The translations under genes were made by a program, and so were the position numbers. The notes under the pieces were generated by a model that was not told the DNA's origin, searched no databases, and saw nothing but the letters and a program-made list of their open reading frames with translations. From positions 124,001 to 188,000 of IMG/VR virus record IMGVR_UViG_3300032770_000002: DNA of 64,000 bases, one strand, 5' to 3'. This document shows, piece by piece, positions 5,962-63,388 of the stretch (the stretch's first letter is position 1; each line of letters starts with the position of its first letter).

Positions 5962-6404
5962 CGGCCAATGAACGCTCGTGATTCGTTCGACGCTATCTGT
6001 GAAATGACTTGGCGATAGAACTGATCGATGTCAGCTTTTCCATTCTTGATGGATTCAGTCGAAGCTCGCAGCGCGATGTCAAGCCCGTCAAAGTAACCAC
6101 GCTGCCACTCAGTGAGCGGGCCGTTAGGATGGGCCAAGCTGGCGAAGCCCATGTTTGTGATCGGCTTTCCTTGCTGGTCCTCGATGCTCTTAATGTGGTG
6201 GTCTTTGGCGTCAATGCGAATGACAATTTCATTGACTGGCTGCGGCTTTTTCAAGGTTGACTCGCGCGTGTAGTTGTAACCCACGATGACGATAAGGCTG
6301 ATCGTCAGGAGCAGCCAGAGGATGACGGACTGGTGTGGGTGATTCGAGTCACTGGGGCTTGGCAATTCCGGTCTCCACTCTTTCTCCTCGGGATTCATAC
6401 TCAC
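5958..6404 (-). CDS. single-pass membrane protein
   Basis: VILWLLLTISLIVIVGY hydrophobic segment. Confidence 0.7.
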   Translation of the reverse strand: MSMNPEEKEWRPELPSPSDSNHPHQSVILWLLLTISLIVIVGYNYTRESTLKKPQPVNEIVIRIDAKDHHIKSIEDQQGKPITNMGFASLAHPNGPLTEWQRGYFDGLDIALRASTESIKNGKADIDQFYRQVISQIASNESRAFIGR

Positions 6405-7144: not shown

Positions 7145-7276
7145 GGTGAAAATGGCGGCCACGCAGGTCACTGAGACCGCCAGGGTGCAACTGCGATCCA
7201 CATGAGACGCCGGCCCGCGTGGCCACTGTGAAGAACTACGTGACGTATTTAATTCGTTGATAATTGAAACAAACCC

Positions 7277-8468: not shown

Positions 8469-8968
8469 TGTTTTACCTTGCGCCAGGTGGCAAGCTAGTC
8501 ACTTACTGGGACCTTCCAACGTGCCAAGTCCCAAACAACTCGAGGGTTGGCTCAGTGTCAATTCACTTCGCCATCACGCAAAAATTTCACGGCCAATGCC
8601 CGTGCATTTCAGGCGCGCCAACCAAGCCAGTTCTGGCTTTGATTCGCGACCCGGTTGAGCGTTATCGGTCGGCCATGGTCAAGGCGGTGGAGGATCGGTC
8701 GCTGGGCAACCACTTTAGCCTGCAGTGCGAACTGCTCATCGGCCAAGACGTGAGACTATACAGGTTTCCTGAACACCTAGAGCAGTTTGTCAAAGACACC
8801 GGGTTAGGCTCCATCACGTGGTCAAACAAGAGCCCAGTGCAAAAGCCAGAGCTTACACCGCAGCAGGTTCAGGATGTCTTGGAACGTTACAAGAAGGACG
8901 TCGAAATCTACGCCAGCATTAGAGAATCTGGGCAGGCGTATGTCAGCTCTCTTCAATCGTCCAGTTGA
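8468..8968 (+). CDS. sulfotransferase-like protein
   Basis: SRVGSVSI (5'-PSB-like) and LIRDPVERYRSA (3'-PB-like); TGATG coupling gives start 8468. Confidence 0.5.
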   Translation: MFYLAPGGKLVTYWDLPTCQVPNNSRVGSVSIHFAITQKFHGQCPCISGAPTKPVLALIRDPVERYRSAMVKAVEDRSLGNHFSLQCELLIGQDVRLYRFPEHLEQFVKDTGLGSITWSNKSPVQKPELTPQQVQDVLERYKKDVEIYASIRESGQAYVSSLQSSS

Positions 8969-10127
8969 CGCTCAGCTTATTCGTGCCATGCTTTATCTCC
9001 GTTGACTCAATGACAAGTCGCTGGTGCGTGAGCGGGACCTCGCCAACCATCTTCCAGTCCTTACTCTGGTCACCCAGTGGGTGGTCGTCGGTGTCACGCA
9101 CGGCCTCGTAGATGTAGAAGTTTCGGACAACCGTTGAGCCCCTTGCATAGCGCCCGGGAGTCCACTCACCCTTTTCAACTTGGCGCGCCTTCCACTCGCA
9201 GTGGGCGAGGCCAAATTCAGGGACGACCCACCCGTCATTGAGGTTGCTGTGCCAGCAACCAGCAAAGAGCGTGAACTGGCGGTTGGTGTCGAGGTTCGTG
9301 TAATTGAGCCGCGCGATGTGGTGTGGCAGCTCGTCAGTTTGAATGTTCCGCGAGCCTTCGAAGGTGTAGTCGAGGATCCAGCCATTCATCTCATACTGGC
9401 TCCCACTGCCGCAGCGCTGCAGCCTGACCATCTTCTTGAAGAGGTTGGCTCGGCCTTCCTTGCCGCCGTCAACCATGGCCCTGGCTATCGGAACCGTGCG
9501 GTTCATGCACCTTATCAGAAACTTGCCGATCTTAGTCTCGACGCCAAAGGACATCGCCAGCTTTTCAAAGCTTGTGACGCAGCGAAGCCAGTCCTCGTAG
9601 AAGCCGTCGACCCTGACGCGTGGGATGCCGCACAGAAACGTGCCATAGCTGTAGTATGGCGAGCAGACGTCGGCAAAGGCAACCTCCCTGGCGATCATGG
9701 CCATCTTTGTCGTGGTGCTAAACTCAGGCATGAACAGGCTGGTGATGGGCACCTTTTTGCGAAGCTCGTCAACGATCAGGTTTGGATCGATGTGCTCAAT
9801 GTCGTTTGTCGGGACGACCAGCAACTGCTTCTGTCCTGGCGTTGACGTGAAGATGTGCTCAGTTTCCTTTGGGTTCTCGCGGATGAGCTTGGCAAGCTCG
9901 CACATGGCCATGTGCCACAAGTCGTCTGGCCTTAAGACAATTGAAAAGTGGCGGCGCCACGCTTGGTCCAAATAACCGAGATAGCCACCATGCCAGACGG
10001 CACTGGCGTCATAAAATAAAAACTTGGCGTCGGTGTTGTTGAAGGCGTTCAGCACGTGGGCGCGCTGGCGCTTCCGGTCCTGGTCTGATGGCATGCTCAG
10101 TTCGGCGTCACAGAGTTCAATGATCAT
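8943..10127 (-). CDS. DUF4419-like protein
   Basis: AWRRHFSIVLRPDDLWH, PEFSTTT and CGIPRVRVDG..EDW motifs. Confidence 0.7.
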   Translation of the reverse strand: MIIELCDAELSMPSDQDRKRQRAHVLNAFNNTDAKFLFYDASAVWHGGYLGYLDQAWRRHFSIVLRPDDLWHMAMCELAKLIRENPKETEHIFTSTPGQKQLLVVPTNDIEHIDPNLIVDELRKKVPITSLFMPEFSTTTKMAMIAREVAFADVCSPYYSYGTFLCGIPRVRVDGFYEDWLRCVTSFEKLAMSFGVETKIGKFLIRCMNRTVPIARAMVDGGKEGRANLFKKMVRLQRCGSGSQYEMNGWILDYTFEGSRNIQTDELPHHIARLNYTNLDTNRQFTLFAGCWHSNLNDGWVVPEFGLAHCEWKARQVEKGEWTPGRYARGSTVVRNFYIYEAVRDTDDHPLGDQSKDWKMVGEVPLTHQRLVIESTEIKHGTNKLSVNWTIEES

Positions 10128-10158
10128 GGGCTGTAGAACTTTGACAGTCAACAAATTT

Positions 10159-42856: not shown

Positions 42857-43135
42857 GTGAACTACATCGTTTACGAAGAAGACGGTTTCGGAGTGGTGGA
42901 GTCACCTTGCGTTGAAGGGCGAAGTCTTGGCGTGTTTTCAGGGACGGAAGCTGAGGTCGCGGCCTACTGTGAAGCTGAGACGCGTAAACTCCACCCGAAG
43001 CGAACGAACTGGGATTCACCGCAGATTCGTTTTAAGCCAGCGATTCAACTTAACCCAAATCACGTAGAATGGCAATCTTCATTAGTTTCGAAGGGGACGA
43101 GTGTGTCGGAAAGACCACACAAGCAAGCATCTTGA
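42857..43135 (+). CDS. hypothetical protein
   Basis: 92-aa ORF. Confidence 0.55.
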   Translation: MNYIVYEEDGFGVVESPCVEGRSLGVFSGTEAEVAAYCEAETRKLHPKRTNWDSPQIRFKPAIQLNPNHVEWQSSLVSKGTSVSERPHKQAS

Positions 43136-43731
43136 CGGCTCGGCTTAAGGCCTCGCGCATCCCGGCCATCTTGGTCCGAGAACCTGGTGGGACGCCGTTT
43201 GGCGAAACATGCCGATCGATCCTAAAGGACCCAAACAACGACCTGTGCCCGGAAGCTGAGCTGCTCTTGATGAACGCTAGCCGCTCGCAACTTGTCAGCA
43301 CAGTCATCTTGCCAGCTTTGAATGAAGGCGTTACCGTAATTGCCGATCGCTTTCATGACTCGACCATCGCCTATCAGGGTTACGGGCGTGAATTGGGACA
43401 GAAGGCCGAAGACGTTGTCAACGTCGCCATCGGTGACGTCATCCCAGACATTACCTTTTACCTGTGGGCGGCCAAGGGCACGAAGGAACGCCGACAAATT
43501 CAGCGTGGAGCTCCGCCAACTGACAAGTTTGAGTCGCTAGACCAGGCCTTTTTTGCTAGGGTGCGTGAAGGCTACGAGCACATCATGACTCATAATGCGC
43601 GCGTTGCGTGCATCGAATCTAGCGGCGCCATTGACCAGGTTTCAGACGCAATTTGGAGCAAGCTACTCAGCTGGAAGGAGTGGTGCGTAAATCGGCCCAA
43701 AAAGCCCTGGGAGCCAAGTCTCAGCTTGTGA
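43069..43731 (+). CDS. tmk: thymidylate kinase
   Basis: FISFEGDECVGKTTQ P-loop, VREPGGT, ADRFHDSTIAYQGYGR. Confidence 0.92.
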   Translation: MAIFISFEGDECVGKTTQASILTARLKASRIPAILVREPGGTPFGETCRSILKDPNNDLCPEAELLLMNASRSQLVSTVILPALNEGVTVIADRFHDSTIAYQGYGRELGQKAEDVVNVAIGDVIPDITFYLWAAKGTKERRQIQRGAPPTDKFESLDQAFFARVREGYEHIMTHNARVACIESSGAIDQVSDAIWSKLLSWKEWCVNRPKKPWEPSLSL

Positions 43732-44290: not shown

Positions 44291-44896
44291 GTGCGTTATT
44301 TACCTGGACATCAATTTGAAAGTGGTTTGATTTTAGTAAGGAGATCTCGAACCGTTCATCGAGGAATTTTCAAGTGTGTTTGCGGTGATGAATTTGAAAC
44401 ATTTATAGCCAATGTCGCTAGGGGTATTACTCGATCATGTGGATGTCTTAAGTCAATACTTCGTCGACAAACACTGGGTCCAATCGATTACGAGTCTGCT
44501 CGTGATAAAATTCTCTTTTCTACGATCAAATTTCATGCCAAAGATCGAGGTCTTGAGTTTGAGTTAACTCTCGATGATGTCCGAAGATTAACGCGTCAAA
44601 ACTGCCATTTCTGTGGGAGTCCTCCGGCCAGTCGTCATTTTATTGGAGGTCGAAATAGACTTGCGTCATTTTACATCATTCATAATGGGATTGACCGATT
44701 GGATAATCTAAAAGGTTACACTGTCAAAAACTCGGTGCCCTGCTGTAAACAGTGCAACTATTCAAAACGCGACAACAGTGTCGACGAATTTAACGCCTGG
44801 ATTGATCGCGTTGTGGCCCATCGTAACGCGGTTAAAGATCAAAGTGAGATGGCTTCAACAGTGATTCTCAGACGAAATTGTCAGTTGACGTGTTAA
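44291..44896 (+). mobile_element. HNH homing endonuclease
   Basis: CVCG...TRSCGC N-domain; CHFCG...NGIDRLDNLKGY...VPCCKQCNYSK; AT-rich; antisense to neighbours. Confidence 0.88.
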
Positions 44897-45932
44897 GAAT
44901 TTCGTGAATGAGAAGATTTTTTTCATTGTTCGCACATTGGTGGCAGCAGTCTCTGACCGGGTCTAAGCCGTCAAACCTTGCCTTGGCCTCGTCGCTGAAC
45001 CACAGCTCGCTAAACTTTCGGTCCTTGATTGACCCGATTGCGCCAGTCTCATCATAGGCCTTGTTGTGGCAAGCATAGACGTTTAAGTCCGCGCCAACGA
45101 CCGGGACAATCTGCATGAAATAGCACCGGTGATAGGTTCGAAAGCTGTTGTGGGCCGATGACATCAAGTCATAGGTCGTGTTGACCGAGAACGTCTTGTC
45201 AACGATCTTGTCGCGAATCTGGTCGAGTTGAACCTGCACCCGTGCAGCGATCTTGCGGTGATACTCGTGGAAGCCGGGTGAAAGCCACATCGGGCTGAAG
45301 CGCACGTTCTGAACGCCGCAGTCCTTAAGCTGCTGTGAGAATTGGAATAGCTTGGAGCAGTTGTCGGCGTGGACGATGAAGTTGACGTAGAGGTCGCAGG
45401 TCTTTGACTTTCTTTTTGCAAAGGCCGCAATGTTGACCATGATCTCGTCGAACATCGACTCATGGACGTGGCGGAACTTTGCCAGCTCCTCCTTGCACGA
45501 GTAGTCCATTGACACGCGAACCCACTTGGCGTTGGCGAGAGTCTCTGCCCGCTCGTCACTCAGAAAGGACCCGTTGGTGATGATGGAGAGGTCGATGTTC
45601 CGCTCAAGCGTGTATCGCATCATCGGCACGATGTCTGGGTGGATGAGCGGCTCACCGCCACCAGAGAACGTCAAGGCCTTGACCCCAATGTCGGAAAAGT
45701 CGTCGAGAAGCTCAATCATCTTCTCGAGCTTGATGCGGTCACGCACGGCCATCTCCTTGTGCATCTGGGACATCTCTGGCGCGTGATAGACACACCACCA
45801 ACAGTGATGGTTGCAGAGATTGATTGGCTTGACCCGGACGTAAATAGGCGCACTGATGGTGCCTTTTCTGAACGACTTGAGCTTGTCCGGGAAGTGAACT
45901 ATCTTCAGGTCTGAATACTTGTTGCTCGGCAC
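44868..45932 (-). CDS. radical SAM/SPASM-domain protein
   Basis: CNHHCWWC, TFSGGGEP, ITNG; SPASM-like CYF...VYACH...IGSI...CCHQC. Confidence 0.9.
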   Translation of the reverse strand: MPSNKYSDLKIVHFPDKLKSFRKGTISAPIYVRVKPINLCNHHCWWCVYHAPEMSQMHKEMAVRDRIKLEKMIELLDDFSDIGVKALTFSGGGEPLIHPDIVPMMRYTLERNIDLSIITNGSFLSDERAETLANAKWVRVSMDYSCKEELAKFRHVHESMFDEIMVNIAAFAKRKSKTCDLYVNFIVHADNCSKLFQFSQQLKDCGVQNVRFSPMWLSPGFHEYHRKIAARVQVQLDQIRDKIVDKTFSVNTTYDLMSSAHNSFRTYHRCYFMQIVPVVGADLNVYACHNKAYDETGAIGSIKDRKFSELWFSDEAKARFDGLDPVRDCCHQCANNEKNLLIHEILNTSTDNFV

Positions 45933-45939
45933 GGTTAAA

Positions 45940-46413
45940 CTACGCTGGCACTTTCTTCAGGCTGATGAACCACGGTCGTTCATAGTCAATTGACTTCATG
46001 GCTCGAATGAGGCCGTCGACTGACGCCGGAAATTTGGCCTGGATGTTTCGGAACATTCCAGTCATTGACAGTGCGTCAAGTTCGTTGTGGCTTGGGCCGT
46101 AGGTTGGGTAGTCCGCGTAGCCAACTAAGCCGACCGGCAGTTTTTGGAAGTCAATGTCAAGCTTGACTTGCTCAAAGGCCCGCTCAAGCAGGAATGGCGT
46201 GATCGTGTAGACGATCGGACGCAGACCGGCGATGGCCATCCCGGCGGCAAATCCAACCATGCTCTGCTCGGCAATTCCAAACTCAATGTGCCTCCGCGGG
46301 CAGAGCGCGCGAAACGTGTCGAACATCGCTCCGCCGACGTCGCCAGTGATGAGGTGGACACGCCCGTCTTGCAGGCCTAACGCGGCAATGGATTCGGCAA
46401 ACTGTTTTCTCAT
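45940..46413 (-). CDS. transketolase-like subunit, pyrimidine-binding domain only
   Basis: LITGDVG, EFGIAEQSMVGFAAGMA..GLRP, FLLERAFEQ, GPSH; lacks the C-terminal domain. Confidence 0.88.
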   Translation of the reverse strand: MRKQFAESIAALGLQDGRVHLITGDVGGAMFDTFRALCPRRHIEFGIAEQSMVGFAAGMAIAGLRPIVYTITPFLLERAFEQVKLDIDFQKLPVGLVGYADYPTYGPSHNELDALSMTGMFRNIQAKFPASVDGLIRAMKSIDYERPWFISLKKVPA

Positions 46414-47045
46414 AGTTCGGACATGATCGATTGAAATTCAGGGTCGGTTAGGAAGTGAACGTGCCAGTCAGGGTGGGCTTCGAAAAGCTTGACACCGAAG
46501 CCCTTCTGGCGTCCGTATGTCTTGATTGGGAACACTTGGTTCATGAGCTTAGTGATTGACGGATCGAGACACCGGCACGAGCCCTGCCACCCGTTGTCGT
46601 CGACGTGAACGGTGAGATTATCGAGGTTGTATCGGCGGGCGACGTTCAAACTTTCCCACGTCGTTCCCTCAAGGCACTCGCCATCGCCAAGCAGGACGTG
46701 GACGTGGCCAGGGGCGTGGATAAACTTCTTGGCGTAGGCGATCCCGACGGCCGTTGGAAGGCCGTGTCCAAGGCTGCCTGTTGTTGACGGAATGCCATTG
46801 GCCGGGTCAATGTCAGGGTGGACCTTCATGACGTTAGGGTGAAAGCCGTGGCTCTCCAAGACCGCAAACCACGCGACACACGCGTGACCCTTGCTAAGGA
46901 TGAAGACGTCATTCTTGTGGTCGAATTGCTTGTAGATGTCCACGATGACCGGAAGTGCGCTCAGGCTGCTGGCGATGTGGCCGTGTGAGTTGATGTCACG
47001 GTGGGACCTGGCTATTTCAATGACGCGGCGAATGAGTTCTTTCAT
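46410..47045 (-). CDS. transketolase-like subunit, TPP-binding domain
   Basis: GHIASSLS, FILSKGHA, TGSLGHGL, LGDGECLEG..WES...VDDNGWQ. Confidence 0.9.
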   Translation of the reverse strand: MKELIRRVIEIARSHRDINSHGHIASSLSALPVIVDIYKQFDHKNDVFILSKGHACVAWFAVLESHGFHPNVMKVHPDIDPANGIPSTTGSLGHGLPTAVGIAYAKKFIHAPGHVHVLLGDGECLEGTTWESLNVARRYNLDNLTVHVDDNGWQGSCRCLDPSITKLMNQVFPIKTYGRQKGFGVKLFEAHPDWHVHFLTDPEFQSIMSEL

Positions 47046-47047
47046 AC

Positions 47048-47719
47048 ATGTTTAGCAAAGAAGAAGTCATCTCGAGCTTGACCACTCCACGTCAAGCTCT
47101 GCTTAACCCGGCTCGGTGGAACCAATTCCTCTCGATGGGCCTGCCGATTAAGGACAAGACGATTTTTGAGCCAGGCGCTGGCATCGGCGACCAGACTGAT
47201 TGGCTGTTGAAGCAGGGCGTGAAACACGTCACGGTCCACGACGGCCGGCCGGAGTCGTTGAAGGTGATTCAAGACCGTTTCGGCTCTGACCCTCGGCTCA
47301 GTTACGTGTGCGGTAACTTGGAGAACGGCCTGACTGAAGCGCAGTTCAACTTCACCGTTGACTTCATCTACTGCTATGGCGTCTACTATCATCTCAACGA
47401 GTCAATGCAGAATTGGAACATCATGAAAGGCCTCGCCAAGATGGGACCAACCATGGCCTTTGACTACCTTGAAAGTCACCGTGGTGACGACTACACGTAT
47501 TCATACGGGTATGAAGTTCCAAGCACGTCAATGAGCCGGTTTGCGCTGCGTCCGACTCGCGCGACTTTAATCAAGGCTGTCAGGGACATCTGGGGCTTTG
47601 CCTACTTGCCAAAGAACCAGCTTCAGTGGAATGACCCTTACGACGGGACGGAGCGGCGCTTTGTCATGGTCGCTTCTCATGTTCCATTGGACGGCGCTAA
47701 CCTTGAGCTTCAGACCTGA
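47048..47719 (+). CDS. class I SAM-dependent methyltransferase
   Basis: IFEPGAGIGD motif I; DFIYCYGVYYH. Confidence 0.82.
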   Translation: MFSKEEVISSLTTPRQALLNPARWNQFLSMGLPIKDKTIFEPGAGIGDQTDWLLKQGVKHVTVHDGRPESLKVIQDRFGSDPRLSYVCGNLENGLTEAQFNFTVDFIYCYGVYYHLNESMQNWNIMKGLAKMGPTMAFDYLESHRGDDYTYSYGYEVPSTSMSRFALRPTRATLIKAVRDIWGFAYLPKNQLQWNDPYDGTERRFVMVASHVPLDGANLELQT

Positions 47720-52328: not shown

Positions 52329-52921
52329 AAGCACGCGACATCATCGATTCGGTCACACCAGAGCGGGCGTGTGTTCAGTGCGAAATTGAACACGGCATTT
52401 ACGACAAGTCAGACCCTAACAAGTCACATGGCTCGTGCCGGCGTCACCTTGAACAGTGGGCAAGGGAACAAGGATTGACTGACGCCCAAGTTGATGAGAT
52501 CATGCGTGAGACCAAGTCTTACCCACCGGACTTGGGGCCAGTTCGTGAAGCCTTAGAAAGGGCTTGTTCGCAGTGCGAAAAGGACCACGGGATTCGAAGC
52601 CACGGTAAAAGCCACGGGCTCTGCAAGCGGCATACCATTGAGTGGGCCAGGGAAGGCGGAGTCTCCGAACCTGAGATTGAGGCCATCGTTCGTGAAGTTG
52701 ACGCTGGTAGTGGCTTTCCAGAGGACCTTGGGCCAGTCAAGAAGGATGAGGACCTTGAAAAACAGTGCCTCTACTGTGGGCGGCTATTTGACCCGCAGTC
52801 AAACCAGTGGGTCGACGCAAAACCTAGGGACCCGAATAACGTCAGTCACGGCTACTGCCCTGATTGTTTGGAGAAGTCCAAGCAACAGGTTCGGTCTATG
52901 TTTGGAACGGAGCGCCGTTGA
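52325..52921 (+). CDS. protein with three CxxC...SHGxC zinc-binding repeats
   Basis: CVQC..SHGSCRRH, CSQC..SHGLCKRH, CLYC..SHGYCPDC. Confidence 0.8.
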   Translation: MKARDIIDSVTPERACVQCEIEHGIYDKSDPNKSHGSCRRHLEQWAREQGLTDAQVDEIMRETKSYPPDLGPVREALERACSQCEKDHGIRSHGKSHGLCKRHTIEWAREGGVSEPEIEAIVREVDAGSGFPEDLGPVKKDEDLEKQCLYCGRLFDPQSNQWVDAKPRDPNNVSHGYCPDCLEKSKQQVRSMFGTERR

Positions 52922-53424
52922 ACGCCCGCAATCTTATCGACCGGTTGGTTGAAACGTCTGACTTGACGTTTGTCCCGATGGACGCTGACGAGATCCGGCA
53001 GGTTCAGTCTATTGCCGCTGGACAGCTGGCCAACGTGGACAATCTTTACTTCATTAACCAGGACATTACTGATTATCACAGCCTTAACATCGACATCCCG
53101 CAGGAGTATTTGCGCAAGAAGGTTGGACACGGCCTTGAATCGGGTGACGTTCACGGCGAGTTTTACGGATTCGGTCGAATGGCCTTCACACCTTCATCTC
53201 TTTTACGGTCTGAAATTGGAAGAGTTCCAGTTGTCTCTGGCTTGCACGTCATGGTGTTAAAGAGCAGCCAAGGGTGGGTTATTGGAACCACTCGCGGAGG
53301 GTCATACGGTGGCATAACTTTTTACAAGGACCACCCGATGCATGACCTCAACGCGGCCATCCAGAAGTTCATTGCCACGCTGGAAGTCATTGCAAATGGA
53401 CAAAATTCCCGGTTTGACAGCTGA
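52918..53424 (+). CDS. hypothetical protein with NARNLID leader
   Basis: TTG 52918 overlapping the upstream stop. Confidence 0.65.
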   Translation: MNARNLIDRLVETSDLTFVPMDADEIRQVQSIAAGQLANVDNLYFINQDITDYHSLNIDIPQEYLRKKVGHGLESGDVHGEFYGFGRMAFTPSSLLRSEIGRVPVVSGLHVMVLKSSQGWVIGTTRGGSYGGITFYKDHPMHDLNAAIQKFIATLEVIANGQNSRFDS

Positions 53425-54379
53425 CGAACATGTCTAGCCGCTTGGCGTAGGGCGTCAGTCTATGGAAGTCGACCCACTCCAGAAAGTTGTCCAGGTCATT
53501 CTGGTCCAAGTTGGTCAGCCCGAGATAGTCAAGGAACGTGAACATCAGCCCGTCTGGGCGCGCAAGCTGAAGGCTGCGCATAAATTCACCCGTTGAAAAT
53601 TCAAAGACGCGGCGCACGCGCTTCGTCACGGTTGTGATTTCGGGCTTTACGCCCAATGACGCCCACGTCAGCTCCTTTCCAGCACACGGCCCAGACGGCC
53701 CGCCAGTCCGTATCGGATATGTCCTAAAGACGCCATAGTAGCTCCAGTCAAGTCCACCAAGCCCATTGCGCTCAACTGCAACCCTCGGCAGCGTTGAGCG
53801 TGACGTGACGTGTGGAAAGAGCCCAAAATTCGTGTCGAGCAACAGGCCTTGTGAGCACTCAAAGATGGCCAAGTTGGAACTGATGTGCGAGATCAGGTTG
53901 AAGTAGGCCTCGTTGTCAACGACGACGATGTCCTGGTTGAGTGAGAAGAAGTCATGTTCAATGACTGACTCAACACGGCGGTGGATAAACTTCCCTGCCC
54001 GGGCCATCCCTGTCCCTGACCCAGTTGACGAAATTCGCCTTACCAGGTCGGATTCGTCGGCCTTCATCTCAGGCATTAAGACGGCCGCGTGCTCGTGGAT
54101 GTAAATCGGCTTTTTGACGGCGCGCCAGTCTCGTTGAAGAAGTTCGAGTTCGATGACTGAGTCTGGGCCCATCAAGATCGAGTCGGCCCAAAAGCTTGAA
54201 GCCGGGATGGAGCGCGTTGACCCTTGGGTGCTCGTGTGTCCGGAGTTCGGGCCGTTTTCACCAATGACGGTCAAGTGGAGTCCCGGGTATTCAGCCCTCA
54301 GTTTCTTGGCCAAAAATTCAGCCGCTGAGGCTTTTCCTTCACTGCCATATTGCCCGCCAAAGACAACGACGTGACGCAT
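53387..54379 (-). CDS. purZ: adenylosuccinate synthetase homologue, PurZ0-like (2-aminoadenine pathway)
   Basis: GGQYGSEGK (Ser where PurA has catalytic Asp13), PNSGHT, SSTGSG, ECSQG, YPIRTGGPSG, ELTW..LG..PEITTVTKRVRRV, TFLDY. Confidence 0.75.
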   Translation of the reverse strand: MRHVVVFGGQYGSEGKASAAEFLAKKLRAEYPGLHLTVIGENGPNSGHTSTQGSTRSIPASSFWADSILMGPDSVIELELLQRDWRAVKKPIYIHEHAAVLMPEMKADESDLVRRISSTGSGTGMARAGKFIHRRVESVIEHDFFSLNQDIVVVDNEAYFNLISHISSNLAIFECSQGLLLDTNFGLFPHVTSRSTLPRVAVERNGLGGLDWSYYGVFRTYPIRTGGPSGPCAGKELTWASLGVKPEITTVTKRVRRVFEFSTGEFMRSLQLARPDGLMFTFLDYLGLTNLDQNDLDNFLEWVDFHRLTPYAKRLDMFVSCQTGNFVHLQ

Positions 54380-54403
54380 GAGCTGAAGAACGTTCTATCG
54401 ACC

Positions 54404-54916
54404 ATGCATCGTTCCATCAAGATTATCTCCGGTGGTCAGACGGGGGCCGATCGTGCTGGTTTAATTTTTGCTCGCGACAACAACATCCCGTATGGAGGCT
54501 ATGTGCCTTTGCGTCGAAAGGCCGAAGACGGGGTGGTGCCGATGATCTTCACCGAGATGACTGAGTCGGCATCGTCAGATTATCGTGTCAGGACTGAGTT
54601 AAACGTGAGAGAGGCCGACTGCACGATCGTCTTTACACGCTGCCCGCTCAGTGAAGTGGCCAGCGGGTCATGGCTGACGATTGCCTTCGCAAAGAAGTAT
54701 GGGAAGGAGTGGCGGCACGTTGACGTCAACAAGCCGAACATGAACGAGGTTGACAAGTGGCTTGAGATGCTTTACGCCAGGTGGCATCACTACGGAAGCG
54801 GGCTTCAATTCACGATCAACGTCGCTGGTGGGCGCGAGTCAAAGAACCGCGGCATTCAAGACGCGGTCCTGGCGCTGTTAAAATCATCCACATTTTTGTT
54901 TACAAATCAAGGTTAG
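54404..54916 (+). CDS. SLOG-superfamily ('putative molybdenum carrier') protein
   Basis: KIISGGQTGADRAGL, GGY.P..RKAEDG, YRVRTELNVREADCT, INVAGGRES. Confidence 0.85.
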   Translation: MHRSIKIISGGQTGADRAGLIFARDNNIPYGGYVPLRRKAEDGVVPMIFTEMTESASSDYRVRTELNVREADCTIVFTRCPLSEVASGSWLTIAFAKKYGKEWRHVDVNKPNMNEVDKWLEMLYARWHHYGSGLQFTINVAGGRESKNRGIQDAVLALLKSSTFLFTNQG

Positions 54917-54933: not shown

Positions 54934-56022
54934 ATGATACGGATTGACAACGCGCCTGTTCCAAACGTGGTCTCGGACCGCAAACTGGGCCTTGAGATCG
55001 AGATTGATCTCGGCAACAATGGGGACCTCAGCGACCTTCCAGACATTCAAGGCTGGATCAAAAAGGGTGACGGCTCGCTCACGCACGGCTACGAATACAC
55101 GTTCAACGGACCGTGCACACCGTCAACATCGAAGGAACGGTGTGAACGATTCTGTCAGTCGATTAAAGATGTGAACGTTCACCGCTCTGGCGGCTTTCAC
55201 GTTCATGTCCAGGGCAACAACTATTCACACGAGGACGCATACAACCTTTGCTTGATTTACACGAAATTCCAGGACGTCATCAACAAGCTTGTGGCGCCTT
55301 CTCGAGTCAGCAACACCTACTGCGAAGCCTATTCGTGGACGTCACTCCGACATCACACTCCGGCGTCATTCGCCCAGGCCTACAATTTGACGCCGCTTGT
55401 CAGCAGTCGTGGCTCCGCGAAAAACGTGGCCAACCGCTATCGGGCAGTCAACACGAACATGCTAGCTTGCCGTGACGAGGCCGACCGCAGCATTGAATTT
55501 CGACAGGGCAGTGTCAGCAAGCGATTTGGCGTGGTCTACGGGTGGCCTTGCTTCCTTGCGGCATTGACTGAGTTGGCCCAGTGCAAAGACCTCTTCGACG
55601 AAGTCCTTAGTGCGCGGTCCATTCAACTTCGCGACCTCTTGGCCGTGCTTCACGCCTGGGAGTCCAAGTCCGGTTCAACGGGCGTCGCCGACTGGGTGGA
55701 GTGGCGATACAATTACCTGAATCAGAAGCCTGACGACGCTGAACTTCGCCTCGCCTTGGAAGCCATCGCTGAGAAGCCAATCGGTCTTTATGGCCTGTCT
55801 CGCAAGATCGACATCAACCTGGCCGTGACAAAGCGGATCATTGATGACCTCTTGGCCAAGGGCCTCATCTTCAAGCGGGCCAACTCGACAGCTTATGTCA
55901 CGTCCTATGAGTTTAAGGCTGAGGCCGACCTGAAGCAGATGATTGAGGCTTTGAAGAGCCGAGCGGCCAGTCTTACACCGCCTCCGCCAATGCCGGCCAC
56001 CCTGCCTCCGCCACAAACATGA
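54934..56022 (+). CDS. amidoligase (COOH-NH2 ligase type 2)-like protein with C-terminal winged HTH
   Basis: LGLEIE, W.KKGDGSL..GYEY, GGFHVHV, IEFRQG; C-terminal LYGLSRKIDIN...IIDDLLAKGLI. Confidence 0.75.
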   Translation: MIRIDNAPVPNVVSDRKLGLEIEIDLGNNGDLSDLPDIQGWIKKGDGSLTHGYEYTFNGPCTPSTSKERCERFCQSIKDVNVHRSGGFHVHVQGNNYSHEDAYNLCLIYTKFQDVINKLVAPSRVSNTYCEAYSWTSLRHHTPASFAQAYNLTPLVSSRGSAKNVANRYRAVNTNMLACRDEADRSIEFRQGSVSKRFGVVYGWPCFLAALTELAQCKDLFDEVLSARSIQLRDLLAVLHAWESKSGSTGVADWVEWRYNYLNQKPDDAELRLALEAIAEKPIGLYGLSRKIDINLAVTKRIIDDLLAKGLIFKRANSTAYVTSYEFKAEADLKQMIEALKSRAASLTPPPPMPATLPPPQT

Positions 56023-57904: not shown

Positions 57905-58255
57905 ATGACAGAATTGTTGACAGGCCGATCACGGCGAGGTTCAGAACCTTGGCTAGGTGTCGACCTTGACGCTACTTTGGCCACCCACAAAGAGGGCTCT
58001 GGCATTGATTCCATCGGTGAGCCAGTGCCTGGCATGCTTGAGAAGGTTAAGCGCGCATTGCGGGCCGGACGCAAGGTGAAGGTCTTCACCGCGCGAGCGG
58101 GTGACCCTAGGCAAATTCCGCTCATTCAGCAGTGGACAGTCAAACATGGGCTTGGAAAGCTCGAAGTGACCAACGAAAAAGACGAGAACTGTGAAGAGAT
58201 TTGGGACGACCGTGCCAAGAGCGTGGTTCCTAACAAAGGACGCTTTGCCAACTAG
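57905..58255 (+). CDS. HAD-superfamily phosphatase
   Basis: GVDLDATL, VFTAR, IWDDRA motifs. Confidence 0.8.
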   Translation: MTELLTGRSRRGSEPWLGVDLDATLATHKEGSGIDSIGEPVPGMLEKVKRALRAGRKVKVFTARAGDPRQIPLIQQWTVKHGLGKLEVTNEKDENCEEIWDDRAKSVVPNKGRFAN

Positions 58256-58259
58256 ATTT

Positions 58260-59396
58260 ATGAGTGAAGAGAACCAACAGGTGCCGGAATTTGACGTTCT
58301 AACTCCAGACATTCCACTGCCGCAAGTCGTGGCGAGGCAGGAAATTGCGGATGAACGGAAGGGAGCGTTTCGATTCAGCTTTATCGGGTCTGGCCAGGGT
58401 GGCGGGAGAATTGCGGCGACATTCCGCGCCCTGGGCTACAAGCGCGTTTGCGCGATCAACACGGCGCGTCAGGACCTGGCGTCGCTCCCAGCCGACGTTA
58501 AGAAACTCGTTATCGGCGATGGAGAAGGAGGTGCTGGCAAAGACCCAGCCGTGGCGAAGGCAGCGTTTGATAAAAACGCTGAAAATGTCCTAGACCTGAT
58601 GCGGGCGTCATTTGGCCAAGTGTATGACCGAACAATCATCTGTGTTGGGGCCGGCGGTGGAACTGGCGCTGGAACGGTGATCGGCCTTGTCGACAAAGCG
58701 CGTGAGCTTCAGGTTGCCAGCAAGTGTCCGACTGACAAGGTCGGCGTCATCGTTGCCCTGCCCAAGGTGACCGAAGGCCGGCGTCCAAGCATCAACGCTC
58801 ACACCGTCTTGTTATCATTGGTCGCCTACGTTGAACAGGGCTTTGTCTCACCGCTTATCGTTCTTGACAACGAGCGAATGAGCTCACTCTATCCTGGGCT
58901 CGCGATCGATCCATTCTGGGACACGGCCAATCAAAGCGTCTGTCGGCTGTTTGACCTCTTCAACATGATCTGCGTTCAAAATTCGACATACACCGCGTTC
59001 GACCCGGCTGATTACAAGTCGATCCTCGACTCAGGCCTGATCGTCTTTGGGGCCACGCCCGTCGCCAACTGGTCGGAGGCCGGCCAAATCAGCTCCGCAC
59101 TGCGAGACAACTTGAAGAAAAACATTCTTGCAGGAGGTGTCAACCTGTCAACTGGAACGGTCGCCGCGGCAATCGTTATTGCTGGAAAGAGCGTCTTAAG
59201 CCAAGTGCCGCACGAGCACCTCGACCAGGCCTTCGATCAATTGACAAGGTTGTTGAAAACAAACAGCATGGTGCACCGTGGCATCTACAGCGGAAACAAG
59301 GACTCCATGGCCATTTACACCGCAATTGGCGGCCTGGCCGCACCGACTGAGAAGCTGGACGAGCTGGCCAAAATCGGCGGGATAAGCGGTAAATAA
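58260..59396 (+). CDS. tubulin/FtsZ-family GTPase (TubZ/PhuZ/CetZ-like)
   Basis: GSGQGGGRI, AINT, GAGKDP, GAGGGTGAG signature, T7-like FDPAD; ATG 58260. Confidence 0.9.
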   Translation: MSEENQQVPEFDVLTPDIPLPQVVARQEIADERKGAFRFSFIGSGQGGGRIAATFRALGYKRVCAINTARQDLASLPADVKKLVIGDGEGGAGKDPAVAKAAFDKNAENVLDLMRASFGQVYDRTIICVGAGGGTGAGTVIGLVDKARELQVASKCPTDKVGVIVALPKVTEGRRPSINAHTVLLSLVAYVEQGFVSPLIVLDNERMSSLYPGLAIDPFWDTANQSVCRLFDLFNMICVQNSTYTAFDPADYKSILDSGLIVFGATPVANWSEAGQISSALRDNLKKNILAGGVNLSTGTVAAAIVIAGKSVLSQVPHEHLDQAFDQLTRLLKTNSMVHRGIYSGNKDSMAIYTAIGGLAAPTEKLDELAKIGGISGK

Positions 59397-60574: not shown

Positions 60575-63388
60575 ATGAATGAGCCAATGCCAACACTGAA
60601 TGAGCGCGTTGAGATCTTAGATGACCTACCAAAACCGATAATTGACGACGCTTCTGCTGCACCTGAACCAGCTCGCCTGACGCGAGTCTTTTCAAAGTCA
60701 GGAATTTGCCCATTTGACGACGTCACGTGGATCAAGCGAGACGTCGACATCACCGATGACAAGGGTAAGGTCGTCTTCACGCAGAAGGGCGTCGAGACTC
60801 CAGAATTTTGGTCCGACCTGGCTGTCAAGATCGTCGCTTCGAAGTATTTTTGGGGCGAAAAGAACACCGACCAGCGTGAACACTCCGTGCGCCAGTTGAT
60901 TCATCGCGTGTGTGACACCATTGCGACGTGGGCCGTTGAAGGACGATACGTTCACCCTGACGACGAGACGCTCTTCTACAACGAACTTTGCTGGCTTTGC
61001 CTGCATCAACACGCGTCTTTTAATTCGCCCGTTTGGTTTAACGTTGGGCTGTTCCACCAATATGAAGCCGGGCGCGGCAGTGAAGGCGGGTGGGCTTGGG
61101 ACCAAGACCTCGGCGAAGCTGTGAGGGTCAGGACGATGTATGAGAAGCCACAGTGCTCGGCTTGCTTCATCGTGTCCGTCGCTGACAACATGGAGGCACT
61201 CCTTGACTTGGCCAAGACTGAGGCGATGCTCTTCAAGTTTGGAAGCGGAACTGGGACGGACCTGACGCCCATTCGTTCATTTCGTGAGAAACTCTCCGGC
61301 GGTGGGTCGCCGTCAGGCCCGATGAGTTTTTTGCGCGTCTACGACCAGGTTGCTGGCATCGTCAAGTCAGGCGGCCGAACTCGTCGTGCGGCGAAGATGA
61401 ACACCATCCGTGACTGGCACCCTGACATCGAGGAGTTCATTAACGCGAAGCCAGTTGAGGAACGAAAAGCGCGGGCCCTAATCGAGTCAGGCTATGATGG
61501 CTCCATTAACGGTGACGCCTACTCGAGCGTGATGTATCAGAATGAGAACCTTTCTGTTCGAGTCAGCGACCAGTTCATGAAGGCAGCCACGAATGGCGAT
61601 GGAACGTGGTGGACAAAAGCGGTCACGAGTGGAGACCGGGTTGAGAAGAAAGACGCCAAGGACTTGCTGCACAAGATGGCCGAAGCAGCTTGGTTCTGTG
61701 GTGACCCAGGCGTGCAGTTTGACGGCGTCATCCAGCGTTACCACACGTGTGCTGGAACGGAGCCGATTCACAGCACAAACCCATGTGCTGAATATGTCTT
61801 CATCAACAACACGTCGTGCAACCTCGCCTCAATTAACCTCGTCAAGTTCATGGAAGGCGAGGTGTTCAACGTCGAGCGGTTCAAAGCCGCGGTGCGGCTC
61901 ATCTTTACGGCCCAAGAGATCTTGTTTGACAACTCGAGCTATCCAACCAAGACGATTGCCGAGAACTCGCACATCTTCAGGACTGTAGGGCTTGGCTTTG
62001 CGAACCTTGGCTCGCTGTTGATGGGCCTTGGCATTCCATATAACTCTGACCAAGGCCGTAGCATTGCCGCTTCGATTACGGCCATCATGACGGGTGAAGC
62101 TTACGCCACGTCGGCTGGAATGGCCAAGACGCTGGGACCGTTTCCGGGGTTCTATGACGCGCGCTGTTCGCACGTCAAGCACCCGGTCAAGGCGAACAAT
62201 GTTGAGTCGATGCGCGACGTCTTAAACCTCCACGCCGCACACGCGAGCAAGCTCAAGACTCCAGGGCACCGCTATCTCGATGCCGCCGCAAACGAGTGTT
62301 GGCTGCGGGCGATTGGACTGTTCAACTGCCACGGTGTGCGCAACGCCCAGGCAACGGTCATTGCGCCAACTGGAACGATCGCATTCATGATGGACTGCGA
62401 CACGACCGGGATAGAGCCAGAGCTTAGCTTGGTCAAGGTTAAGTCGCTCATCGGTGGCGGGTCCTTGACGATCGTCAATCGCTCCATCGGTCGGGTGCTT
62501 CGCCAGCTCGGCTACAGTGAGCCTGAAATTGATGCCGCGATCAAACACGTGGAGAAATATGGCCACCTTGAGGCCATCAGCGAGGACATCAAGTCGCCGC
62601 TCAGGATTGACGACCACCACGACGTCTTTGACACGTCACTGCCGGCCGGGCCGAGCAAGCGCTCCATCCCATACATGGCCCACGTCCAGATGATGGCTGC
62701 AGTTCAGCCGTTCATCTCTGGGGCGATTTCAAAGACGATCAACATGCCAGAAAGCTCCACGGTCGAAGACGTGAAGCAGGCTTACGTGGAAGCGTGGAAG
62801 TCTGGTCTGAAGTGTGTGGCCATCTACCGTGATGGCTCTAAACGAGCCCAGCCATTAAACGTCAAAAAGTTTGGTCAAGACAAAGCAGCGGACCCGGCGT
62901 TAAATGGCCACGGTGTTTATCTCCCAAATCGACACCGGCTCCCTGACACCCGGAAGGCCGTGACGCACAAGTTCAGCGTTGGTGGCCATGAGGGTTACCT
63001 GACTGTCGGCCTCTTTGAAAACGACATGCCAGGTGAGCTGTTCATCACGATGGCCAAGGAGGGTTCGACGGTAGGCGGCCTGATGGACACGATTGGCACG
63101 CTGACAAGTTTGGCGCTGCAGTATGGCGTGCCACTCGAAGCTTTAATCCGCAAGTTTCGGTCAACTCACTTCGAGCCATCTGGCATTACGACAAATCCAA
63201 AAATCCGGATGTCGGCCTCGATCATCGACTACATATTCCACTGGATGGCCCTTGAATTTGACCACGATGACGAAGTTTCCAGCGTCAGTGACGAGGTAAA
63301 GACGTGCCCACATTGCGGCCACGTGGCGCAGCGTAGTGGGACGTGTTACACTTGCACGAATTGCGGAAGCAGTCTCGGTTGCAGTTGA
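60575..63388 (+). CDS. nrdJ: class II (adenosylcobalamin-dependent) ribonucleotide reductase with TSCPD and zinc-ribbon tail
   Basis: FNSPVWFN, QCSACF, GSGTG, TNPCAE, CNLASINL, IAPTGTI, QPFISGAISKTINMP, YRDGSK. Confidence 0.95.
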   Translation: MNEPMPTLNERVEILDDLPKPIIDDASAAPEPARLTRVFSKSGICPFDDVTWIKRDVDITDDKGKVVFTQKGVETPEFWSDLAVKIVASKYFWGEKNTDQREHSVRQLIHRVCDTIATWAVEGRYVHPDDETLFYNELCWLCLHQHASFNSPVWFNVGLFHQYEAGRGSEGGWAWDQDLGEAVRVRTMYEKPQCSACFIVSVADNMEALLDLAKTEAMLFKFGSGTGTDLTPIRSFREKLSGGGSPSGPMSFLRVYDQVAGIVKSGGRTRRAAKMNTIRDWHPDIEEFINAKPVEERKARALIESGYDGSINGDAYSSVMYQNENLSVRVSDQFMKAATNGDGTWWTKAVTSGDRVEKKDAKDLLHKMAEAAWFCGDPGVQFDGVIQRYHTCAGTEPIHSTNPCAEYVFINNTSCNLASINLVKFMEGEVFNVERFKAAVRLIFTAQEILFDNSSYPTKTIAENSHIFRTVGLGFANLGSLLMGLGIPYNSDQGRSIAASITAIMTGEAYATSAGMAKTLGPFPGFYDARCSHVKHPVKANNVESMRDVLNLHAAHASKLKTPGHRYLDAAANECWLRAIGLFNCHGVRNAQATVIAPTGTIAFMMDCDTTGIEPELSLVKVKSLIGGGSLTIVNRSIGRVLRQLGYSEPEIDAAIKHVEKYGHLEAISEDIKSPLRIDDHHDVFDTSLPAGPSKRSIPYMAHVQMMAAVQPFISGAISKTINMPESSTVEDVKQAYVEAWKSGLKCVAIYRDGSKRAQPLNVKKFGQDKAADPALNGHGVYLPNRHRLPDTRKAVTHKFSVGGHEGYLTVGLFENDMPGELFITMAKEGSTVGGLMDTIGTLTSLALQYGVPLEALIRKFRSTHFEPSGITTNPKIRMSASIIDYIFHWMALEFDHDDEVSSVSDEVKTCPHCGHVAQRSGTCYTCTNCGSSLGCS

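What the first reader, a model, noticed from the sequence alone, without database searches (positions are those of the whole stretch)
53387..54379. PurZ0-like synthetase: possible 2-aminoadenine (Z) genome in a jumbo T4-like phage
Seen: GGQYGSEGK, SSTGSG, YPIRTGGPSG, PEITTVTKRVRRV, TFLDY. Established: PurA has catalytic Asp in GDEGK and Thr in (S/T/P)TRVG, whereas PurZ has Ser and Ile (GSTGK; PIRV) and accepts dGMP. The Asp retained in TFLD (PurA TKLD; PurZ NFCN) points to GTP use, as described for PurZ0. Characterised Z-genome phages are mostly small sipho- and podoviruses. No DatZ (HD), MazZ or DpoZ gene is visible in this window, so full Z substitution is not established.
Basis: partly seen in the sequence, partly recalled or inferred. 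Interest (0 to 1): 0.85.

Follow-up and report, generated by a model that had tools for sequence, protein, structure and literature searches.

The report
Lone PurZ-like synthetase in jumbo phage
A 230 kb uncultured phage carries an intact enzyme of the family that makes 2-aminoadenine ("Z") for phage DNA, from a previously undescribed branch of that family, but none of the usual helper genes was found in the 64% of the genome examined, so a fully Z-substituted genome remains unproven.

Summary
Window 53387-54379 (-) encodes an intact 330-aa PurA/PurZ-family synthetase, and every quoted motif is at the stated place.

It belongs to the PurZ group: Ser replaces catalytic Asp13, and it has Pro-Ile-Arg and TVTK-x-RR. 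It keeps the guanine-specific Asp (TFLD), as PurA and PurZ0 do, so GTP is the predicted phosphate donor.

It is neither classical PurZ nor actinophage PurZ0. It sits in a third, metagenome-only clade (support 100/100, long stem) with its own near-invariant Thr225 and Arg254 beside the sugar 2' position.

Across that clade, 14 non-redundant small-contig members (<=34 kb) all have a DutZ-like dUTPase 200-475 bp downstream. Most also have a protein-primed PolB and a DUF4406 gene, and one has a PurB-like lyase. The 11 large-phage members, including all 9 groups of the window's subclade, carry the gene alone.

No DatZ, MazZ, DutZ, DmtZ, NUDIX, PurB-like or DpoZ-clade gene was found in the 64% of the 230 kb genome I could read. 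"Jumbo" is right; "T4-like" is unsupported.

Best reading: a captured, functional, GTP-dependent dGMP-to-dSMP synthetase. How much Z enters the DNA is unknown.

The parts
53387..54379 (-). Gene for a 330-aa PurZ-group (Ser13) adenylosuccinate-synthetase homolog; the finding itself
54332..54358 (-). P-loop GGQYGSEGK. Ser13 replaces the catalytic Asp13 of PurA (PurZ-group signature). Glu14 is kept, as in PurA and PurZ0. Ala17 marks the large-phage subclade.
54233..54247 (-). NSGHT, equivalent to PurA N38-A-G-H41-T42 (phosphate/Mg site). Ser in place of Ala is clade-specific.
54014..54031 (-). SSTGSG, equivalent to PurA G-T128-T129-G-R-G (nucleotide 5'-phosphate loop). An invariant Arg134 follows, one column from PurA Arg143.
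53690..53719 (-). YPIRTGGPSG. Pro-Ile-Arg is as in PurZ and PurZ0 (PurA has Ser-Thr-Arg). Thr225, where PurA, PurZ and PurZ0 all have Val, is found in 29 of 30 clade members; this position lines the sugar C2'.
53606..53644 (-). PEITTVTKRVRRV, the aspartate/sugar loop. The V-T-K pattern is as in PurZ. Arg254 aligns with PurA Arg303 (Lys or Leu in PurZ and PurZ0) and is invariant in the clade (30/30).
53525..53539 (-). TFLDY, the NTP-base pocket. Asp284 equals PurA Asp333 and the PurZ0 Asp (guanine-specific). Phe282 and Tyr285 are as in phiVC8 PurZ.
54404..54916 (+). Context only: cpYpsA SLOG-family gene, divergent, with its start codon 24 bp from the purZ-like start. Tested as a possible partner and rejected.
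54934..56022 (+). Context only: amidoligase-like gene (PHROG 7631/2443). No demonstrated link to the synthetase.
43069..43731 (+). Context: thymidylate-kinase-family dNMP kinase, part of the loose nucleotide-metabolism region.
60575..63388 (+). Context: class II (B12-dependent) ribonucleotide reductase, 937 aa.

Best explanation
The gene encodes a functional PurZ-type synthetase from a third, previously undescribed lineage of the PurZ group. [quoted passage not shown] GTP is the predicted phosphate donor (ancestral, PurZ0-like pocket). Host PurB and host kinases would then make dZTP, which ordinary polymerases accept. The lineage's home appears to be small phages of about 22-34 kb with a protein-primed PolB. 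There the gene sits in a fixed module with a DutZ-like dUTPase, often a DUF4406 (deoxyribosyltransferase-like) gene, and in one case a PurB-like lyase. Large phages, including this 230 kb one, captured the synthetase gene alone, at least twice. In this phage it is therefore a lone Z-nucleotide-producing gene. The phage DNA probably contains some 2-aminoadenine, but complete A-to-Z replacement would need a dATP-clearing function that was not found. Shown: family, clade, residues, fold and gene contexts. Inferred: substrates, GTP use, and any Z in the DNA.
For: Family and fold: (best TM 0.86 to PurZ0 7VF6, 0.83 to phiVC8 PurZ, 0.79 to archaeal PurA). PurZ-group residues are invariant in 30 of 30 clade representatives: Ser13, Lys16, His48, Gln177, Arg224, Arg256 and Asp284. 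Separate clade: 100/100, stem 1.15 substitutions per site, with an E-value gap of 5e-47 versus 2e-36 in the exhaustive search. GTP pocket: Asp284 sits at the position where the Asn/Gln amide of PurZ would clash with guanine's 2-amino group (PMC8342488). Pathway link in the sister subclade: 14 of 14 non-redundant small-contig members have a dUTPase 200-475 bp downstream, against 0 of 11 large-phage members (Fisher p = 2e-7). Those dUTPases resemble characterised DutZ (8e-12). The same dUTPase peptide patterns retrieve PurZ-group loci, mostly PurZ0-type, in 21 of 41 IMG/VR hits. A PurB-like lyase lies directly upstream in L015. Purifying selection in large phages: 9 non-redundant groups at 55-71% identity keep every catalytic residue. 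[quoted passage not shown]
Against: No DatZ, MazZ, DutZ, DmtZ/NDT, NUDIX or PurB-like gene was found in record bases 78,900-226,338, which is 64% of the genome. This rests on Pfam tables, tblastn and profile HMMs. The polymerase is family A but not of the DpoZ clade. No conserved neighbour exists among the large-phage loci. The score against the curated NCBIfam PurZ model is 143.5 bits, below the 300-bit cut-off. Thr225 and Arg254 at the sugar 2' site differ from every characterised PurZ and PurZ0, so the sugar or base specificity could differ. One large-phage homolog (L064) has Leu instead of the diagnostic Ser. No biochemical or DNA-composition data exist.
Confidence: 0.55

Rival explanations
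1. Full Z-genome. The phage replaces all adenine by 2-aminoadenine, using this synthetase plus dATP- and dGTP-processing enzymes that lie in the unread 36% of the genome or are not homologous to the known ones.
For: The enzyme is intact and conserved. 36% of the genome is unread. Most ORFs in the read part have no family assignment. The region is rich in nucleotide-metabolism genes: Tmk, class II RNR, a hydroxymethylase-like gene and PolA.
Against: In every characterised Z phage, and in the sister subclade, the partners lie within a few kb of purZ. Here, and in all 10 other non-redundant large-phage groups, there is none within 10 kb, or within the shorter flanks of the three short contigs. 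Sensitive dUTPase and HD profiles found nothing in 147 kb.
Confidence: 0.2
2. Same chemistry on a different substrate. The clade-specific Thr225 and Arg254 beside the sugar 2' position let the enzyme take a ribonucleotide (GMP, giving 2-amino-AMP, later reduced by the phage class II RNR) or another 6-oxopurine nucleotide, so the product or route differs from PurZ.
For: Arg254 aligns with PurA Arg303, which contacts the ribose 2'-OH of IMP; PurZ has Lys or Leu there, placed too far away to do so (PMC8342488). Thr replaces the Val that packs on C2'. Both are near-invariant in the clade. A class II RNR lies 6 kb away.
Against: The sister subclade is wired to deoxynucleotide enzymes, namely a dUTPase and a deoxyribosyltransferase-like DUF4406. 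Arg303 also binds aspartate in PurA, so its retention need not concern the sugar. The residue inference comes from alignment only.
Confidence: 0.12
3. Ordinary adenylosuccinate synthetase used as an auxiliary metabolic gene to boost (d)AMP supply.
For: Pfam and JGI annotate it as adenylosuccinate synthase. It retains the GTP-type Asp and Arg303 like PurA.
Against: Catalytic Asp13 is Ser in 30 of 30 clade representatives, and Thr271 and Thr300 are replaced as in PurZ. It scores 143 bits against the PurZ model, 84 against archaeal PurA and 60 against bacterial PurA. Asp13 is 99% conserved in true PurA (PMC12884076).
Confidence: 0.06
4. A passenger gene with no role in the large phages (recent horizontal capture, drifting).
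For: It is solo, in variable contexts among small ORFs. One large-phage homolog has Leu for the key Ser.
Against: Nine non-redundant large-phage groups that have diverged to 55-71% identity keep all catalytic residues and a full-length ORF.
Confidence: 0.07

Closest known systems
PurZ0 (GTP-dependent PurZ variant of actinophages such as Gordonia phage Archimedes, PDB 7VF6; Ghobes; Wayne)
   Same: Ser at Asp13, Glu14 kept, Pro-Ile-Arg, V-T-K/N, and Asp kept at the PurA-333 position (GTP-type pocket). It is the best structural match (TM 0.86, rmsd 2.7 A). The sister subclade shares the PurZ0-style partners, a dUTPase and an N-deoxyribosyltransferase-like gene.
   Different: Only 27-29% identity. 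It forms a separate clade in the tree, although a sister relation is not rejected. The P-loop is GSEGK(A/G) rather than GSEAKG. It has Thr225 and Arg254 where PurZ0 has Val and Lys. It has Phe282 and Tyr285, as phiVC8 PurZ does. In this phage no dutZ or dmtZ was found.
PurZ (ATP/dATP-dependent; Vibrio phage phiVC8 6FM1, cyanophage S-2L 7ODX)
   Same: Fold, Ser13, Ile223, Val251-Thr252-Lys253, and the stacking Phe and Tyr of the NTP pocket. 29-34% identity, with Burkholderia phage Bm1 the best cultured hit. NCBIfam PurZ is the top model.
   Different: GSEGK rather than GSTGK. Asp284 rather than Asn/Gln, which predicts GTP rather than ATP. No adjacent datZ, mazZ or dpoZ. It lies outside the PurZ clade (100/99) and scores below the NCBIfam cut-off.
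Short archaeal-type PurA (Pyrococcus horikoshii 5K7X/2D7U)
   Same: Short (about 330 aa) architecture, lacking the bacterial PurA insertions. GTP-type Asp, and Arg at the Arg303 position.
   Different: Catalytic Asp13 is replaced by Ser. Similarity is lower (1.5e-11 against 1.5e-23 for PurZ; TM 0.79). NCBIfam archaeal PurA scores 84 bits against 143 for PurZ.

Membership tests
Adenylosuccinate synthetase superfamily (PF00709) | Significant match to the family model, and the PurA fold | tested here: met
   Pfam 64.8 bits against a cut-off of 27. AlphaFold model pLDDT 95.6; 43 PDB PurA/PurZ chains at E <= 1e-3.
PurZ group (PurZ + PurZ0, as delimited in PMC12884076) | Catalytic Asp13 of PurA replaced by Ser | tested here: met
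   Ser13, invariant in 30 of 30 clade representatives.
PurZ group (PurZ + PurZ0, as delimited in PMC12884076) | Groups with PurZ/PurZ0 rather than with PurA | tested here: met
   In the tree rooted on E. coli PurA, it lies inside the Ser13 assemblage. The nearest 150 representatives are all Ser, with one Gly. No archaeal PurA was available as a second outgroup.
PurZ group (NCBIfam NF038379 amino_Aden_PurZ) | Score above the curated cut-off (300 bits) | tested here: not met
   143.5 bits. It is the best model but is below the cut-off.
PurZ sensu stricto | ATP-type base pocket (N-F-x-N/Q) and a GSTGKG P-loop | tested here: not met
   TFLD and GSEGKA.
PurZ sensu stricto | Member of the PurZ clade | tested here: not met
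   The PurZ clade (100/99) excludes it.
PurZ sensu stricto | Synteny with datZ and mazZ (or DUF550), usually also dpoZ | tested here: not met
   None in the window or in 64% of the genome. The reference loci show the expected synteny.
PurZ0 | Asp retained at PurA position 333 (GTP as donor) | tested here: met
   Asp284, 30 of 30 in the clade. Actual GTP use is not testable here.
PurZ0 | Member of the monophyletic PurZ0 clade | tested here: inconclusive
   The free tree keeps the two apart, each fully supported. Forcing them together costs 27 lnL units; AU p = 0.112.
PurZ0 | Genome encodes dutZ (98 of 98 PurZ0 genomes) and usually dmtZ | tested here: not met
   A 38-sequence dUTPase profile and a 15-sequence DmtZ profile gave no hit in 147 kb, and 36% of the genome is unread. 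The feature is met in the sister small-phage subclade (14 of 14).
PurZ/PurZ0 enzyme activity | dGMP + Asp + NTP gives dSMP | not testable with these tools
   Needs an enzyme assay.
Z-genome phage | 2-aminoadenine replaces adenine in virion DNA | not testable with these tools
   Needs LC-MS, restriction-resistance or nanopore signal data.
DpoZ (Z-selective family A polymerase) | Phage PolA belonging to a DpoZ clade | tested here: not met
   The 1,068-aa PolA (L073:5240-8446) matches DpoZ references only at 1e-7 (21-24% identity). Its nearest relatives are SPO1-like Bacillus phages at about 25%. No tree was built.
Jumbo phage | Genome over 200 kb | tested here: met
   Contigs of 230,253, 230,267 and 230,155 bp from JGI, ENA and Logan assemblies, with different start points. 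IMG/VR UViG.
T4-like phage | T4-type hallmark proteins or a detectable relationship to T4-like genomes | tested here: not met
   No Pfam or PHROG hit to T4 structural or replication hallmarks among the large ORFs. No megablast or tblastn relative. The only T4-reminiscent item is a dCMP-hydroxymethylase-like gene just outside the window.

The most novel reading that the evidence does not exclude
A 230 kb phage lineage puts 2-aminoadenine into its DNA using a lone, GTP-dependent PurZ-type enzyme of a new clade, without any DatZ/MazZ/DutZ-type pool editing. It may combine this with a 5-hydroxymethyl-cytosine-type modification (a hydroxymethylase-like gene and amidoligases lie nearby). That would be the first jumbo phage with Z-DNA, and a genome modified on two bases. 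In parallel, the clade's home lineage would be the first Z-genome phages replicated by a protein-primed family B polymerase.
Probability: 0.25. Interest if true: 0.85.

Novelty: new variant of a known kind. Interest (0 to 1): 0.62.

Why it matters
Known Z-genome phages are small sipho- and podoviruses in which purZ is wired to dATP- and dGTP-processing genes and usually to a dedicated family A polymerase. This finding adds a third PurZ lineage with an ancestral, GTP-type pocket. It shows that lineage in two states. One is a tight purZ-like/dUTPase/PolB module in phages of about 25-30 kb. The other is a bare gene captured repeatedly by phages of 100-240 kb. That makes two questions directly testable. 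How much Z does a PurZ-type enzyme install on its own in a natural phage? Can protein-primed family B polymerases replicate Z-DNA? The clade-specific Thr225 and Arg254 also offer a natural experiment on sugar specificity, useful for engineering enzymes that make Z nucleotides.

Tried and rejected
1. cpYpsA SLOG neighbour as a dAMP-clearing analogue of DmtZ: rejected. Its phage homologs occur only in phages not known to carry PurZ (Maribacter phages, Rctr197k, IAS virus), and it is absent from every related clade locus.

2. A 145-aa ORF (record 95,550-95,987) with a marginal NUDIX-profile match (E = 0.017): rejected, because it has no NUDIX match in the PDB.

3. Scan of 185,579 species genomes with the clade alignment: no relative. 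This gave no host clue and no archaeal outgroup.

4. Scan of IMG/VR with DutZ-like dUTPase patterns, hoping to retrieve the window's contig: it was not among the 41 loci. This is weak negative evidence, because the patterns were narrow.

5. PHROG, Pfam and PDB sequence searches of unannotated neighbours (186-aa convergent ORF 52864-53424; the 208-, 293- and 280-aa ORFs; the 153-aa ORF next to the hydroxymethylase-like gene): nothing informative.

6. Sigma-70 promoter and intrinsic-terminator scan around the gene: no meaningful sites.

7. Search for a conserved unknown neighbour among 10 large-phage loci: none, apart from DUF4419 in 3 of them.

8. Literature: no paper in the library links PurZ to jumbo phages or to protein-primed PolB.

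9. The primary PurZ0 paper (Tong et al., Nat Microbiol 2023) is not in the library. GTP use by PurZ0 rests on my own knowledge plus the indirect statement found.
Full report
OBSERVATION. Window 53387-54379 (minus strand) is an intact 330-codon ORF. The protein matches Pfam Adenylsucc_synt (8e-18). Its best NCBIfam model is PurZ at 143.5 bits, against 84 for archaeal PurA and 60 for bacterial PurA, though it falls below the curated 300-bit cut-off. It also matches PHROG 1211 (2e-41). Its best solved relatives are the PurZ structures of phiVC8 (1.5e-23) and S-2L, then PurZ0 7VF6, then Pyrococcus PurA. An AlphaFold model built on a 60-sequence alignment is very confident (pLDDT 95.6, pTM 0.93). 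Its top structural matches are S-2L PurZ, phiVC8 PurZ and PurZ0 (TM 0.81-0.86), ahead of archaeal PurA (0.79) and bacterial PurA (about 0.65-0.70).

RESIDUES. I aligned the protein with E. coli PurA, four PurZ, two PurZ0 and its own relatives.
- It has Ser at Asp13. PMC12884076 reports Ser there in all 147 phage PurZ/PurZ0 sequences, and Asp13 as 99% conserved in true PurA.
- It has Ile at Thr271, Val at Thr300, and Pro before Ile-Arg. All of these are PurZ-group states.
- It keeps Glu14, as PurA and PurZ0 do, where PurZ has Thr.
- It keeps Asp284 at PurA position 333, in the motif TFLD. PurZ has NFCN, NFAN or NFAQ there.

[quoted passage not shown] The carboxylate retained here therefore predicts GTP as the donor, as in PurA and PurZ0. 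GTP use by PurZ0 is from my own knowledge of Tong et al. 2023, and it is consistent with the statement found. The sentence in PMC12884076 that gives 'ATP and GTP, respectively' for PurZ0 and PurZ seems to have the order swapped, judging by that paper's own introduction.

Two features are specific to this protein's clade and nearly invariant. Thr225 replaces the Val that packs on sugar C2' in PurA, PurZ and PurZ0. Arg254 sits at the PurA Arg303 position, where PurZ and PurZ0 have Lys or Leu. In PurA this Arg contacts the ribose 2'-OH and aspartate. The Arg that reaches across the dimer (PurA Arg143) appears as an invariant Arg134, one alignment column away.

CLADE. The large protein database holds relatives at 54-71% identity on contigs of up to 230 kb, and relatives at 43-52% identity on many contigs of 22-34 kb. 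All are metagenomic. An exhaustive search of 1.84 billion representatives shows a gap between this clade (E <= 5e-47) and everything else (E >= 2e-36). Every one of the 150 nearest representatives carries the PurZ-group Ser, apart from one Gly. 91 keep Asp333 and 62 have the classical Asn. A careful IQ-TREE analysis (LG+C20, 84 sequences, rooted on E. coli PurA) gives three fully supported groups on an unresolved backbone, alongside other Asp-retaining metagenomic lineages. These groups are the window's clade (100/100, stem 1.15), PurZ0 (100/99) and PurZ (100/99) (the quick 158-sequence tree agrees). Forcing the window's clade together with PurZ0 is not rejected (AU p = 0.112). I therefore call it a third lineage with PurZ0-like, ancestral features, not a member of PurZ0. 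No representative genome of 185,579 bacterial and archaeal species encodes a relative.

GENOME. The window is bases 124,001-188,000 of JGI contig Ga0335085_10000140, also known as IMGVR_UViG_3300032770_000002, 230,253 bp. Two further assemblies, from ENA (230,267 bp) and Logan (230,155 bp), have almost the same length but different start points. This suggests a complete, circularly permuted genome.

It has no DNA-level relative among 50,697 phage records. Most proteins have no Pfam or PHROG family. The tubulin-like protein and a 509-aa protein have no tblastn hit in any phage record, and a 423-aa protein only weakly hits two uncultured 640 kb phages. So 'jumbo' is right and 'T4-like' is unsupported. 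The replicative polymerase is a 1,068-aa family A enzyme. It is nearest (about 25% identity) to those of SPO1-like Bacillus phages and only remotely like DpoZ (E about 1e-7).

SEARCH FOR PARTNERS. I fetched reference Z loci, namely phiVC8, S-2L, Bm1, Bhz9, Sapo and PinkFriday. I then looked for DatZ, MazZ/DUF550, DutZ, DmtZ, DpoZ, PurB-like and NUDIX genes in three ways:
- Pfam scans of about 75 window ORFs.
- The precomputed Pfam tables along the contig.

By walking the contig I read record bases 78,900-226,338, which is 64% of the genome. Nothing was found. One marginal NUDIX lead failed a PDB check.

The adjacent, divergent cpYpsA SLOG gene looked attractive, because SLOG/LOG enzymes are nucleotide N-glycosidases (my own knowledge). 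However, it is not conserved with the synthetase anywhere, and its phage homologs are in phages not known to carry PurZ.

GUILT BY ASSOCIATION ACROSS THE CLADE. I combined loci from the protein look-ups, IMG/VR and the JGI metagenome scan and de-duplicated them at 90% identity.
- Small-contig members: 14 groups, all on contigs <= 34 kb and all with the GSEGKG/THxDY signature. Every one has a dUTPase-family gene 200-475 bp downstream of the synthetase. Where the flanks allow, they also have a protein-primed PolB 1.4-4.2 kb away and usually a DUF4406 gene.
- Large-phage members: 11 groups with none of these. They comprise all 9 groups of the window's GSEGKA/TFLDY subclade, plus two other large-contig lineages of 129-238 kb.

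The contrast gives Fisher p = 2e-7. The 'ndt' profile hits fall on the dUTPase ORFs, because that profile contained DmtZ-DutZ fusion proteins, so they are not independent evidence.

The small-phage dUTPases resemble characterised DutZ (8e-12 and 4e-8). Their peptide patterns retrieve 41 IMG/VR loci, of which 21 carry a PurZ-group gene within 6 kb, mostly PurZ0-type. In L015 a 352-aa protein whose only PDB matches are adenylosuccinate lyases lies directly upstream of the synthetase.

The wider clade is thus embedded in a PurZ0-style deoxynucleotide module, which ties its chemistry to the Z pathway. In the tree the large-phage subclade is nested among the small-phage members, and a second large-phage pair (L064 and L066) branches elsewhere in the clade. 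Large phages therefore captured the bare gene at least twice. Among the large-phage loci nothing but the synthetase is shared, apart from DUF4419 near it in 3 of 10.

INTERPRETATION. The enzyme is almost certainly active. It is full-length, all catalytic residues are invariant, and it has been conserved across nine diverged large-phage groups. Its most likely reaction is dGMP + Asp + GTP giving dSMP. Host PurB and kinases would complete dZTP. [quoted passage not shown]

Without a dATP-clearing step, the simplest expectation is partial Z incorporation. Full substitution needs an undiscovered partner. The rivals are a different sugar or base specificity (suggested by Thr225 and Arg254), a true PurA role (contradicted by Ser13), and a drifting passenger gene (contradicted by conservation). 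None of these can be settled without an assay or DNA chemistry.

NOVELTY. In the library I searched, no paper places PurZ in a jumbo phage or beside a protein-primed PolB. The finding is a new variant of a known kind. Its importance depends on whether the DNA really contains Z.

Noticed in passing
just right of the window: record 188,081-188,797 = L016:10311-11027 (would be window 64,081-64,797): The 'thymidylate synthase' family gene matches CMP/dCMP 5-hydroxymethylases (MilA 5B6D 8e-15; T4 dCMP hydroxymethylase 1B49 1e-11) much better than true ThyA (7e-5). The phage may make a 5-hydroxymethyl-cytosine-type base. Two amidoligases (window ~54934-56022; L016:11764-13014) and a class II glutamine amidotransferase (L073:441-1403) lie nearby and could elaborate it.
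   Followed up: partly
window 58191-59396 (+): Tubulin/TubZ-like GTPase (Pfam Tubulin 4e-9, TubZ-like_C 3e-5) with no tblastn match in 50,697 phage records. It is a very divergent phage tubulin, but no nucleus-forming-phage hallmark was identified.
   Followed up: partly
window 44868-47719: Cluster of a radical SAM/SPASM enzyme (-), a split transketolase (N-terminal TPP part 46410-47045 and pyrimidine-binding part 45940-46413, both -) and a SAM methyltransferase (47048-47719, +). This is an unexplained small-molecule or sugar-modification module.
   Followed up: no
window 6401-7201 (-) and 8943-10154 (-): QueC-like PP-loop protein (weak, 4.5e-7) and a DUF4419 protein (1.4e-29). DUF4419 homologs lie 1-4 kb from the PurZ-like gene in three related large-phage loci (L017, L099, L003), whereas here it is 43 kb away.
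   Followed up: partly
window 54380-54403: The start codons of the PurZ-like gene (-) and the cpYpsA gene (+) are only 24 bp apart and divergent. Neither has a recognisable Shine-Dalgarno sequence or a sigma-70-like promoter, so the promoters must lie inside the neighbouring gene or be of a phage-specific type.
   Followed up: partly
window 52864-53424 (+) and record 106,940-107,437 (L077:8648-9145): The 186-aa ORF that converges on, and overlaps, the 3' end of the PurZ-like gene by 38 bp has a paralog (31% identity, 1e-17) about 70 kb away in the same genome. It has no family, PHROG or PDB match.
   Followed up: partly
L064:10001-11029 (IMGVR_UViG_3300037264_008423, 238 kb): A clade member in another jumbo-size contig has Leu in place of the diagnostic Ser13 (GLEGKG), and PIRVG instead of PIRTG. 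It may have an altered or lost activity.
   Followed up: no
L014, L015, L082-L096, L101, L103: Contigs of about 20-34 kb (probably near-complete genomes) carry a fixed module: PurZ-like gene, small ORF, DutZ-like dUTPase, protein-primed family B polymerase, and often DUF4406. L014 adds a NUDIX gene and L015 a PurB-like lyase. If these are Z phages, they would be the first replicated by a protein-primed PolB.
   Followed up: partly
L073:5240-8446: The phage's DNA polymerase is a 1,068-aa family A enzyme whose closest cultured relatives (about 25% identity) are SPO1-like Bacillus phages. About 300 N-terminal residues are not covered by most matches.
   Followed up: partly
L017:18936-19916: A close relative of the window phage (its PurZ-like protein is 67% identical) encodes a Dam-like N6-adenine methyltransferase (MethyltransfD12). 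That would have few good targets if adenine were fully replaced by Z.
   Followed up: no
[quoted passage not shown]: The sentence assigning 'ATP and GTP, respectively' to PurZ0 and PurZ appears to have the order reversed relative to the same paper's introduction and to other sources.
   Followed up: partly
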